64,000 nucleotides of DNA from Macrostomum lignano (lineage: Eukaryota), in NCBI GenBank assembly GCA_002269645.1, contig NIVC01000084.1, positions 496,001 to 560,000 of the forward strand, given 5' to 3'. Positions 14,701 to 15,661 of this stretch are shown here, one piece after another. Both the position numbers and the translations under genes were made by a program. How positions within the stretch are numbered: the stretch's first letter is position 1; each line of letters starts with the position of its first letter. The notes below the pieces were generated by a model, which was not told the DNA's origin, did no database searches, and was given only the letters and a program-made list of their open reading frames with translations.

Positions 14701-15039
14701 CTCTCATCTGTTTATCTATGTTTCATAGTATGCTTTTAATAGTTTCCTGTCTGATGATATATCTAGTTTGCATTATATTTTAAAAAGAAATGTATAGTTT
14801 ATAACCAAATAATACTTTATAACAGTTTACTATACAATTATTTACTATTCCAGTTTCTTTTATTGATTTGCGTTTAGTTACATAGGTTAGGAATGTTATT
14901 ATCGTGGTTTATTAAAGTTTCTCGAGAGTAACTCAACTAGACTTTATAAGAGACTGCGATATAGAGAATGGGGTGTTCAGGTGTTCAGGGTACGTATAGT
15001 TTAGGTGGAGTCAGAGGTGGATGGAGAGAGGGTGAAGAG

Positions 15040-15365
15040 AGTCAGGGGTAAAGAGAGTCAGGGGTAAAGAGAGGCAGGGGTGGAGAGAGTCAGCGGTAAA
15101 GAGAGTCAGGGGTAAAGAGAGTCAGCGGTAAAGAGAGTCAAGTGTGGAGAGAGTCAGCGGTAAAGAGAGTCAGGGGTAAAGAGAGTCAGCGGTAAAGAGA
15201 GTCAGGGGTAAAGAGAGTCAAGGGTGGAGAGAGTCAGCGGTAAAGAGAGTCAGGGGTAAAGAGAGTCTGGGGTAAAGAGAGTCAGCGGTAAAGAGAGTCA
15301 GCGGTAAAGAGAGTCAGCGGTAAAGAGAGTCAGCGGTAAAGAGAGTCAGGGGTAGAAAGCGTCAG
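15040..15365 (+). repeat. 16-bp minisatellite upstream of the first TAF1A-like exon
   Basis: GAGAGTCAG(C/G)GGTAAA, about 19 copies. Confidence 0.9.
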
Positions 15366-15428
15366 GTGTAAAAATTCGTATAGAGTCGAAGGTAAAGAGT
15401 GAGGGAAAATCTTCAACTCCCACTTCAG

Positions 15429-15661
15429 AAACTTCAACGACGCAAGCAGAAGCTCTGGTCTCGTTGGCTCGCCGCCGCTGTCAAAGCGGACTCGACCGGC
15501 GATGTTGAATCGGCGTCACAGGAGCGTCGGCTAGATCGATTGCGTCGCATCGCTGGCGGACTACTGCGCCTTGGCGATAGCACCAAATTGTTGAGCCCGC
15601 TGCTCGGCAGTGCTAACTATGCCAGGCTGACCGCACCTGCTGATTATCGCTTCTTGTCCAG
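15429..15661 (+). CDS. TAF1A: TAF1A (TAFI48, Pol I SL1 subunit)-like exon 1; open frame with no Met
   Basis: cacttcag acceptor at 15428 (phase 0) and ag|gtgagc donor at 15662 (phase 2), which matches the next exon. GC-rich open frame KLQRRKQKLWSRW...YRFLSR. Confidence 0.65.

What the first reader, a model, noticed from the sequence alone, without database searches (positions are those of the whole stretch)
14968..15661. TAF1A-like gene has no start codon of its own: candidate for initiation at the spliced-leader AUG
Seen: the TAF1A frame starts exactly at a phase-0 acceptor (CACTTCAG|AAA CTT, 15429) and has no Met until the end of exon 2, which is already inside the conserved region. The frame is closed upstream by TAA at 15393. 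The only strong upstream donor (G|GTACGT, 14990) follows an ATG at 14968 in phase 1 and would give a short out-of-frame ORF. Knowledge: flatworm spliced leaders end in AUG, and this AUG has been shown to serve as initiator Met in schistosomes. Inference: SL trans-splicing at 15428 yields MKLQRRKQKLW... (580 aa), so a core Pol I factor would depend on trans-splicing for translation. Alternatives: GTG initiation at 15399, an unseen phase-0 exon, or a weak-donor fusion with the upstream SNRNP48-like exon.
Basis: partly seen in the sequence, partly recalled or inferred. Interest (0 to 1): 0.78.

Follow-up and report, generated by a model that had tools for sequence, protein, structure and literature searches.

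The report
Flatworm TAF1A gene lacking own ATG
A Macrostomum lignano (flatworm) gene for a TAF1A-like RNA polymerase I factor has no start codon in the genome and most likely borrows the AUG at the end of the trans-spliced leader, a mechanism already described in flatworms, so it is a useful annotation fix and not a new phenomenon.

Summary
The window is Macrostomum lignano Mlig_3_7 scaffold NIVC01000084.1. A four-exon, 579-codon frame starts exactly at a phase-0 acceptor (CTTCAG|AAA, first exon base 15429). It is closed 36 nt upstream by TAA, and its first in-frame ATG is codon 154 (17396).

No upstream ATG-plus-donor combination in the 1.15-kb intergenic region joins in frame. The protein is a divergent TAF1A homologue: BLASTP 7e-7, hhalign 91.7%, FPxNPNxH motif, but below the Pfam cut-off. 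The homology begins well before Met154. All four paralogue differences before Met154 are synonymous.

The published M. lignano spliced leader ends in ...TTGCATG, and the acceptor fits the published trans-splice motif [T/C]TNCAG. The transcript-derived GenBank models, made with the leader trimmed, are all 5'-partial. In this copy the model starts 3 nt after the acceptor.

The best reading (about 0.65) is SL trans-splicing at 15428|15429, with the SL AUG as initiator, giving MKLQRRKQ... (580 aa). No SL-junction read could be examined here.

The mechanism is known (Cheng et al. 2006 in schistosomes) and acknowledged for Macrostomum (Wiberg 2023). This is therefore a new member of a known kind, of modest interest.

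The parts
13776..14279 (+). Upstream same-strand gene (GenBank 167-aa 5'-partial model; stop TGA 14277-14279). It bounds the space available for any cis 5' exon.
   Evidence: no Pfam family
14911..14916 (+). ATTAAA, the only canonical poly(A)-signal-like hexamer between the two genes. It is the presumed 3' end signal of the upstream gene.
   Evidence: motif only; inferred
14968..14989 (+). Upstream ATG plus 22 nt, ending at donor-like G|GTACGT (14990). It is phase 1, so joining it to 15429 gives a short out-of-frame ORF. It lies in the presumed outron.
15030..15372 (+). 16-nt tandem repeat (GGGTAAAGAGAGTCAG, 21 copies) inside the presumed outron. Each unit carries a donor-like GGTAAAG and none has an ATG.
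15393..15395 (+). In-frame TAA that closes the reading frame 36 nt before the acceptor.
15409..15428 (+). Pyrimidine-rich tract (78% Y) ending in CTTCAG. This is the predicted SL trans-splice acceptor and matches the published [T/C]TNCAG motif.
   Evidence: PMC8629364
15429..15661 (+). Coding exon 1 (77 codons plus 2 nt) with no ATG in frame. It starts in phase 0, so the SL ...CAUG reads straight into AAA CUU CAA.
17170..17407 (+). Coding exon 2. TAF1A homology begins here, and the first genomic in-frame ATG is at 17396-17398 (codon 154).
17786..18481 (+). Coding exon 3, containing the TAF1A signature YA..KFPGNPNSH.
18848..19420 (+). Coding exon 4, with stop TAA at 19418-19420.

Best explanation
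This is a Macrostomum lignano TAF1A-like gene (GenBank BOX15_Mlig002718g4, PAA91550.1). Its pre-mRNA is SL trans-spliced at the acceptor 15427-15428.

The 35-nt leader CGGTCTCTTACTGCGAAGACTCAATTTATTGCATG replaces the outron. That outron carries the out-of-frame ATG at 14968 and the 16-nt repeat array. The last three leader nucleotides, AUG, land in phase 0 and serve as the initiator codon, giving a 580-aa protein that starts MKLQRRKQKLW.

The gene probably sits second or third in an operon-like run of same-strand genes, which would make trans-splicing obligatory.

Shown here: the gene structure, the missing ATG, the phase, the organism and its SL sequence, and the TAF1A homology. Inferred: that the SL is actually joined at this site and that its AUG is used.
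For: 1. Organism and leader. The window is 100% identical to M. lignano NIVC01000084.1. The SL ends in ATG (PMC8629364).

2. The acceptor. CTTCAG| matches the published trans-splice motif and is the only AG with a pyrimidine tract. The next three AGs are also phase 0.

3. The modelled mRNA. In an SL-plus-mRNA model the SL AUG is the first AUG and opens 580 codons. Four out-of-frame AUGs (ORFs of 10, 3, 18 and 5 codons) precede the next in-frame AUG.

4. The existing annotation. It was built from RNA-seq with the SL trimmed and transcripts cut at SL peaks (PMC5730564). It calls all copies 5'-partial, and this copy's CDS starts at 15432, 3 nt after the acceptor. About 70 nt of unique sequence upstream is not included.

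5. The region before Met154 is coding.
   - BLASTP against TAF1A gives E 7e-7 and hhalign gives 91.7% probability. Both align from P0001 residue 96, about 63 residues before that Met.
   - All 4 paralogue differences before Met154 are synonymous, P about 0.005-0.02.
   - Exon 2 starts in phase 2, so it needs exon 1 to keep the frame.

6. No usable cis start exists.

7. Operon-like setting. The distance from the upstream stop to the acceptor is 1149 nt, or 427 nt after subtracting tandem repeats. This is under the 1-kb operon criterion of PMC8629364.

8. Precedent. Cheng et al. 2006, as cited in PMC9851317 and PMC12582326. Wiberg 2023 calls the Macrostomum SL's final ATG a translation start codon.
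Against: - No read or cDNA with the SL joined to AAACTTCAACG was seen. None of the collections I could search holds M. lignano transcripts.
- The GenBank CDS begins 3 nt after the acceptor in this copy and 12 nt after it in two other copies, not exactly on it. The annotated 5' ends are therefore only approximately at the splice site.
- The presumed outron contains donor-like sites: GTACGT at 14990 and about 21 GGTAAAG units. An ideal outron should lack these.
- The SL AUG has a weak Kozak context (U at -3).
- The first 90 or so residues, encoded by exon 1, have no detectable homologue. Their translation rests on the open frame, on frame continuity into exon 2 and on one synonymous difference.
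- The block from the upstream gene through exon 1 is almost identical between paralogues. Conservation there says nothing.
Confidence: 0.65

Rival explanations
1. Translation starts at the first genomic in-frame AUG (codon 154, 17396), producing a 426-aa protein. Exon 1 and most of exon 2 would be a long 5' UTR, whether or not the mRNA is trans-spliced.
For: This AUG has a good context, cagaacATGC with A at -3. The exon-1-encoded N-terminus has no detectable homology.
Against: It would delete the part aligned to human TAF1A residues 63-135, which includes many residues invariant in mammals. Four out-of-frame AUGs, plus the SL AUG if present, precede it. All 4 paralogue differences upstream of it are synonymous in this frame.
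Confidence: 0.12
2. An unannotated cis-spliced 5' exon supplies an in-frame ATG to the acceptor at 15428. It could lie in the intergenic region, inside a repeat, or further upstream.
For: Flatworm acceptors are often shared between cis- and trans-splicing (PMC12582326). Donor-like sites exist upstream. Repeats can break transcript assembly, and the upstream gene's model is also truncated next to a repeat.
Against: No ATG...GT phase-0 combination with a credible donor exists between 14279 and 15428. The best score is -1.2 against 3.2-6.6 for real donors. The repeat units contain no ATG. Transcript-based models of three copies show no such exon. The upstream gene leaves only about 430 nt of non-repeat space.
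Confidence: 0.1
3. Fusion with the upstream ORF through the weak donor CGG|GTTCGT at 14046 (phase 0). The product would be a chimeric protein, as in the old fused UniProt model A0A1I8FJB4.
For: The donor at 14046 is in phase 0 and would read ...ATERR|KLQRR in frame. An earlier annotation fused the two genes (P0002).
Against: The donor score is -0.56 and does not fit the M. lignano GT[G/A]AG motif. The upstream ORF continues another 78 codons to its own stop. P0002 shifts frame at the junction (NFNDASR then KLWSRW), as expected from indel errors in the older assembly. The newer transcript-based annotation separates the genes.
Confidence: 0.03
4. Non-AUG initiation on an unspliced or differently processed transcript, using the in-frame GTG at 15399 or a near-cognate codon in exon 1.
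For: GTG at 15399 is in frame and downstream of the TAA.
Against: It lies 30 nt inside the intron-like tract, directly before a strong acceptor. An unspliced leader would carry the ATG at 14968 and other upstream AUGs. There is no precedent in this organism. The only in-frame near-cognates in the first 30 codons are two AAG codons.
Confidence: 0.03

Closest known systems
Flatworm SL 3'-terminal AUG used as initiator methionine (Cheng, Cohen, Ndegwa and Davis 2006, J Biol Chem 281:733; 'slORFs' of PMC9851317)
   Same: The leader ends in AUG and the acceptor is in phase 0. The recipient ORF has no AUG of its own upstream of conserved sequence. The organism is a flatworm.
   Different: The demonstration was in Schistosoma mansoni. 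Here the species is the free-living M. lignano and no junction or translation data were examined. In Macrostomum the idea is only mentioned in passing (PMC10468722).
TAF1A / TAFI48 (Pfam PF14929, TAF1_subA), subunit of the Pol I selectivity factor SL1; yeast counterpart Rrn11
   Same: There is collinear similarity to mammalian TAF1A over most of the length. It includes P.I.W, the region aligned to WRYGE, AYKGLL-like, DxFV..Y, YA..KFPxNPNxH and K.C.Y.R motifs. The fold is all-helical and TPR-like.
   Different: Identity is only about 20-22%. The protein is 130 aa longer because of insertions. The Pfam score (19.2 bits) is below the gathering cut-off (31.8), and it was seen only when the N-terminal 223 aa were scanned alone. 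UniProt auto-names the cluster 'Separase', for which I found no support.
SL-resolved operons of M. lignano (Ustyantsev and Berezikov 2021, PMC8629364)
   Same: There is a run of same-strand genes. The repeat-adjusted intergenic distance is under 1 kb. The downstream gene starts at a YTNCAG acceptor.
   Different: Polycistronic transcription was not shown here. The upstream gene's poly(A) site is inferred from one ATTAAA. An own promoter in the AT-rich 14700-14960 stretch is equally possible.

Membership tests
SL-AUG-initiated flatworm mRNA | The organism's spliced leader ends in AUG immediately before its donor site | tested here: met
   The organism was identified as M. lignano. The published SL is CGGTCTCTTACTGCGAAGACTCAATTTATTGCATG followed by GTAAG (PMC8629364). 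The SL gene is not in this window.
SL-AUG-initiated flatworm mRNA | The SL is joined at an acceptor that puts its AUG in frame with the main ORF | tested here: inconclusive
   The phase-0 acceptor and the 580-codon ORF are confirmed in silico. The transcript-based CDS starts 3 nt after the acceptor. No junction read was available.
SL-AUG-initiated flatworm mRNA | No genomic in-frame AUG is available upstream of conserved coding sequence | tested here: met
   TAA at 15393; first in-frame ATG at codon 154, inside the TAF1A-homologous region; no in-frame cis exon.
SL-AUG-initiated flatworm mRNA | The protein's N-terminal Met derives from the SL (translation evidence) | not testable with these tools
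   This needs ribosome profiling, N-terminal proteomics or a reporter assay.
TAF1A (PF14929) | Score above the Pfam gathering threshold | tested here: not met
   The full length gives no hit at E<=1. The N-terminal 223 aa give E 8.6e-4 and 19.2 bits against a cut-off of 31.8.
TAF1A (PF14929) | Significant pairwise or profile similarity to bona fide TAF1A, including the FPxNPNxH signature | tested here: met
   BLASTP against Pan troglodytes TAF1A gives E 7e-7 over 267 columns. hhalign against 16 mammalian TAF1A gives 91.7% probability, E 7.7e-7. Invariant columns are shared along the whole alignment.
TAF1A (PF14929) | Helical TPR-like fold, and membership of the SL1 complex | tested here: inconclusive
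   The AlphaFold models are all-helical but of low confidence, pLDDT 41 and 51. Foldseek gives only generic TPR or 14-3-3 matches, best E 0.036. No TAF1A structure is in the PDB copy. Complex membership is not testable.
M. lignano operon, downstream gene | Same-strand upstream gene, repeat-adjusted intergenic distance under 1 kb, and a trans-spliced downstream gene | tested here: inconclusive
   Same strand, and 1149 nt minus 722 nt of tandem repeats leaves 427 nt. Trans-splicing and polycistronic transcription were not observed.

The most novel reading that the evidence does not exclude
The acceptor at 15428 may be used both in cis and in trans. The cis routes would start from the ATG-14968 mini-exon or from the roughly 21 donor-like GGTAAAG repeat units. 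Only the SL-spliced product would carry an in-frame AUG. The choice between cis- and trans-splicing would then act as an on/off switch for a Pol I core factor, tying rRNA transcription capacity to SL RNA supply in a stem-cell-rich animal.
Probability: 0.08. Interest if true: 0.5.

Novelty: new member of a known kind. Interest (0 to 1): 0.27.

Why it matters
The finding fixes an annotation. GenBank lists this gene as 'hypothetical protein, partial' and UniProt as 'Separase'. It is most likely the complete M. lignano TAF1A orthologue once the leader's Met is added.

It also shows that pipelines which trim the whole leader, including its ATG, systematically leave SL-AUG-dependent genes 5'-partial. 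This affects gene sets, orthology calls and transgene design in this model flatworm.

Biologically it would add an essential Pol I factor to the list of genes that cannot be translated without trans-splicing. The principle itself is two decades old.

Tried and rejected
- Rfam scan of the window found nothing, and the SL sequence is absent from the window.
P0001 is not on record there.
- phmmer against 1.8 billion representatives found only M. lignano copies, so no orthologue from another flatworm was available to test conservation of the ATG-less acceptor.
- The PDB sequence search gave nothing useful.
- Structure prediction was low-confidence and the fold search non-specific.
- Supplements of four M. 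lignano papers (PMC8629364, PMC5730564, PMC5816591, PMC5173321) do not mention Mlig002718 or TAF1A in the held text; PMC8629364 has no supplement held. A full-text search of the paper library for the gene id also found nothing.
- An exact-match scan of JGI metagenome contigs for the SL-exon junction found nothing, as expected.
- I first took the near-identity of the outron between paralogues as possible constraint. I rejected this because the whole block from the upstream gene to exon 1 is about 99.8% identical, which points to a conversion or recombination boundary in intron 1.
- The 'Separase' label has no support from Pfam.

Full report
**What the window is.** The spliced protein matches Macrostomum lignano proteins at 99-100%. 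The GenBank locus fetched for PAA91550.1 (BOX15_Mlig002718g4, 'hypothetical protein, partial') is base-for-base identical to window 9432-25420. The window is therefore NIVC01000084.1 (assembly Mlig_3_7, GCA_002269645.1), positions 496001-560000.

**The observation.** Reading the sequence and translating it confirms every coordinate.
- The acceptor is ...tcttcaactcccacttcag|AAA CTT CAA, with the first exon base at 15429.
- An in-frame TAA lies at 15393 and an in-frame GTG at 15399.
- The exons are 15429-15661, 17170-17407, 17786-18481 and 18848-19420, giving 579 codons plus TAA.
- The first in-frame ATG is codon 154, at 17396.
- The upstream ATG at 14968 runs 22 nt to G|GTACGT (14990). That is phase 1 and goes out of frame when joined to 15429.

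I enumerated all ATG...GT phase-0 pairs between the upstream gene's stop (14277-14279) and 15428. The best donor scores -1.2 on a simple consensus matrix, where the gene's three real donors score 3.2-6.6. The 16-nt tandem repeat that fills 15030-15372 has no ATG. Two further contigs (L001, L002) carry the same acceptor context and the same upstream ATG and donor. They differ only in repeat copy number, so the missing ATG is not an assembly error.

**Is it TAF1A-like?** Pfam finds nothing for the full protein at E<=1. phmmer against 1.8 billion representatives finds only M. lignano copies. Scanned alone, the N-terminal 223 aa hit PF14929 (TAF1_subA) at E 8.6e-4 and 19.2 bits, below the 31.8-bit cut-off.

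I then retrieved genuine TAF1A sequences using a query I recalled from memory. That query proved 99% identical to Pan troglodytes TAF1A. Three comparisons support homology:
- BLASTP of the flatworm protein against that TAF1A gives E 7e-7 over 267 columns, including LTDYA--AKFPGNPNSH against LTNYAYDEKFPSNPNAH.
- hhalign against 16 mammalian TAF1A gives 91.7% probability, E 7.7e-7.
- A MAFFT alignment shows shared invariant residues through to the C-terminus.

So it is a divergent TAF1A homologue, although it does not pass Pfam's own threshold. UniProt's automatic name 'Separase' has no support. AlphaFold models are all-helical but of low confidence, and Foldseek returns only generic TPR-like folds. 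No TAF1A structure is in the PDB copy.

**Is the sequence before Met154 translated?** Four lines of evidence say yes.
- The homology with TAF1A starts about 63 residues before that Met. P0001 residue 96 aligns with human residue 63, and the Met aligns with about human I136.
- Exon 2 begins in phase 2 and needs exon 1 to keep the frame. Joining the SL directly to exon 2 runs into a stop.
- Between this copy and L001 there are 13 synonymous and 5 non-synonymous differences. All four that lie before Met154 (codons 19, 88, 123, 151) are synonymous, P about 0.005-0.02.
- In a modelled SL-plus-mRNA, four out-of-frame AUGs with ORFs of 3 to 18 codons lie between the SL AUG and Met154.

**Why the SL AUG?**
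- The single M. lignano leader is CGGTCTCTTACTGCGAAGACTCAATTTATTGCATG, followed by GTAAG in its gene (PMC8629364).
- The top motif at its 21,754 acceptor sites is [T/C]TNCAG placed at the junction, and this site reads CTTCAG.
- It is the only AG near the start of the frame with a pyrimidine-rich tract (78%). The next three AGs are also phase 0.
- The Mlig_3_7 annotation was made by trimming the leader from reads, cutting transcripts at SL peaks and running TransDecoder (PMC5730564). A gene that depends on the SL AUG must therefore come out 5'-partial.
- All copies are indeed 5'-partial. In this copy the CDS starts at 15432, 3 nt after the acceptor, even though 56-70 nt of unique sequence lies just upstream.
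- The gene lies 1149 nt downstream of a same-strand gene, or 427 nt once tandem repeats are subtracted. That is inside the operon criterion of PMC8629364.
- About 45% of human-conserved M. lignano genes are trans-spliced, by my calculation from that paper's figures.

**Caveats.**
- No SL-junction read was seen. No searchable collection holds M. lignano transcripts, and the held paper supplements do not list the gene.
- The annotated CDS starts are 3 nt (this copy) or 12 nt (L001, L002) past the acceptor and not on it.
- The outron has donor-like sites.
- The SL AUG has U at -3.
- The block from the upstream gene through exon 1 is about 99.8% identical between paralogues, against about 98.9% for exons 2-4 and 81-96% for introns. 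That near-identity reflects a conversion or recombination boundary, not constraint.

**Comparison with what is known.** Use of the flatworm SL's terminal AUG as initiator Met was shown in Schistosoma mansoni by Cheng et al. 2006. [quoted passage not shown] All reported flatworm SLs keep the ATG (PMC12582326). Wiberg et al. 2023 label the Macrostomum SL's final ATG a translation start codon and kept it untrimmed for that reason. This locus is therefore one more probable instance in another species and another gene.

**Verdict.** Novelty is 'new member of a known kind'. Interest is about 0.27.

Noticed in passing
window 3789-11521: A 7.7-kb satellite of a 33-nt unit (ACAACCACAATAAACTGCAACCTCAAAAATTCA, about 236 copies) with extreme strand skew (GC skew about -0.66). 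It overlaps the span of the GenBank 435-aa CS+TPR gene model, whose locus reaches window 12108, so it is probably intronic.
   Followed up: partly
window 12131-12417 and 14314-14692: The same 28-nt repeat family (GCCTCCCAGATCCTCAGTTGCTGGGCCA) sits directly 3' of the stop codons of two consecutive same-strand genes (stops at 12108 and 14279). It may be a shared 3'-UTR or intercistronic repeat.
   Followed up: no
window 13767-14279: The upstream GenBank 167-aa model is also 5'-partial, but here an in-frame ATG lies 9 nt upstream (13767) and its annotated start is not at an acceptor. A strong donor-like GAG|GTGAGC sits inside its ORF at 13918.
   Followed up: partly
window 13776-15661 versus 15662-19590, compared with L001: Identity between duplicated copies changes abruptly in intron 1. 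There are 2 differences in about 1160 non-repeat nt upstream, against about 1.1% in exons 2-4 and 4-19% in introns. This suggests gene conversion or a recombination breakpoint between the homeologous copies.
   Followed up: partly
window 15030-15372: The 16-nt repeat in the presumed outron carries a 5'-splice-site-like GGTAAAG in each of its roughly 21 units. Copy number differs between paralogues: the distance from the upstream ATG to the acceptor is 461 nt in this copy, 541 nt in L001 and 539 nt in L002.
   Followed up: partly
window 15794-16240 (intron 1): A foldback or MITE-like element with perfect 54-nt terminal inverted repeats (15824-15877 and 16187-16240).
   Followed up: partly
UniProt A0A1I8FW49, A0A1I8FY68, A0A1I8H7F6 (P0001, P0007, P0006) and A0A1I8FJB4 (P0002): Public models of this gene are named 'Separase' or fused to the upstream gene as 'Not1 domain-containing protein'. 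Both labels look like annotation artefacts. P0002 shifts frame at the junction.
   Followed up: partly
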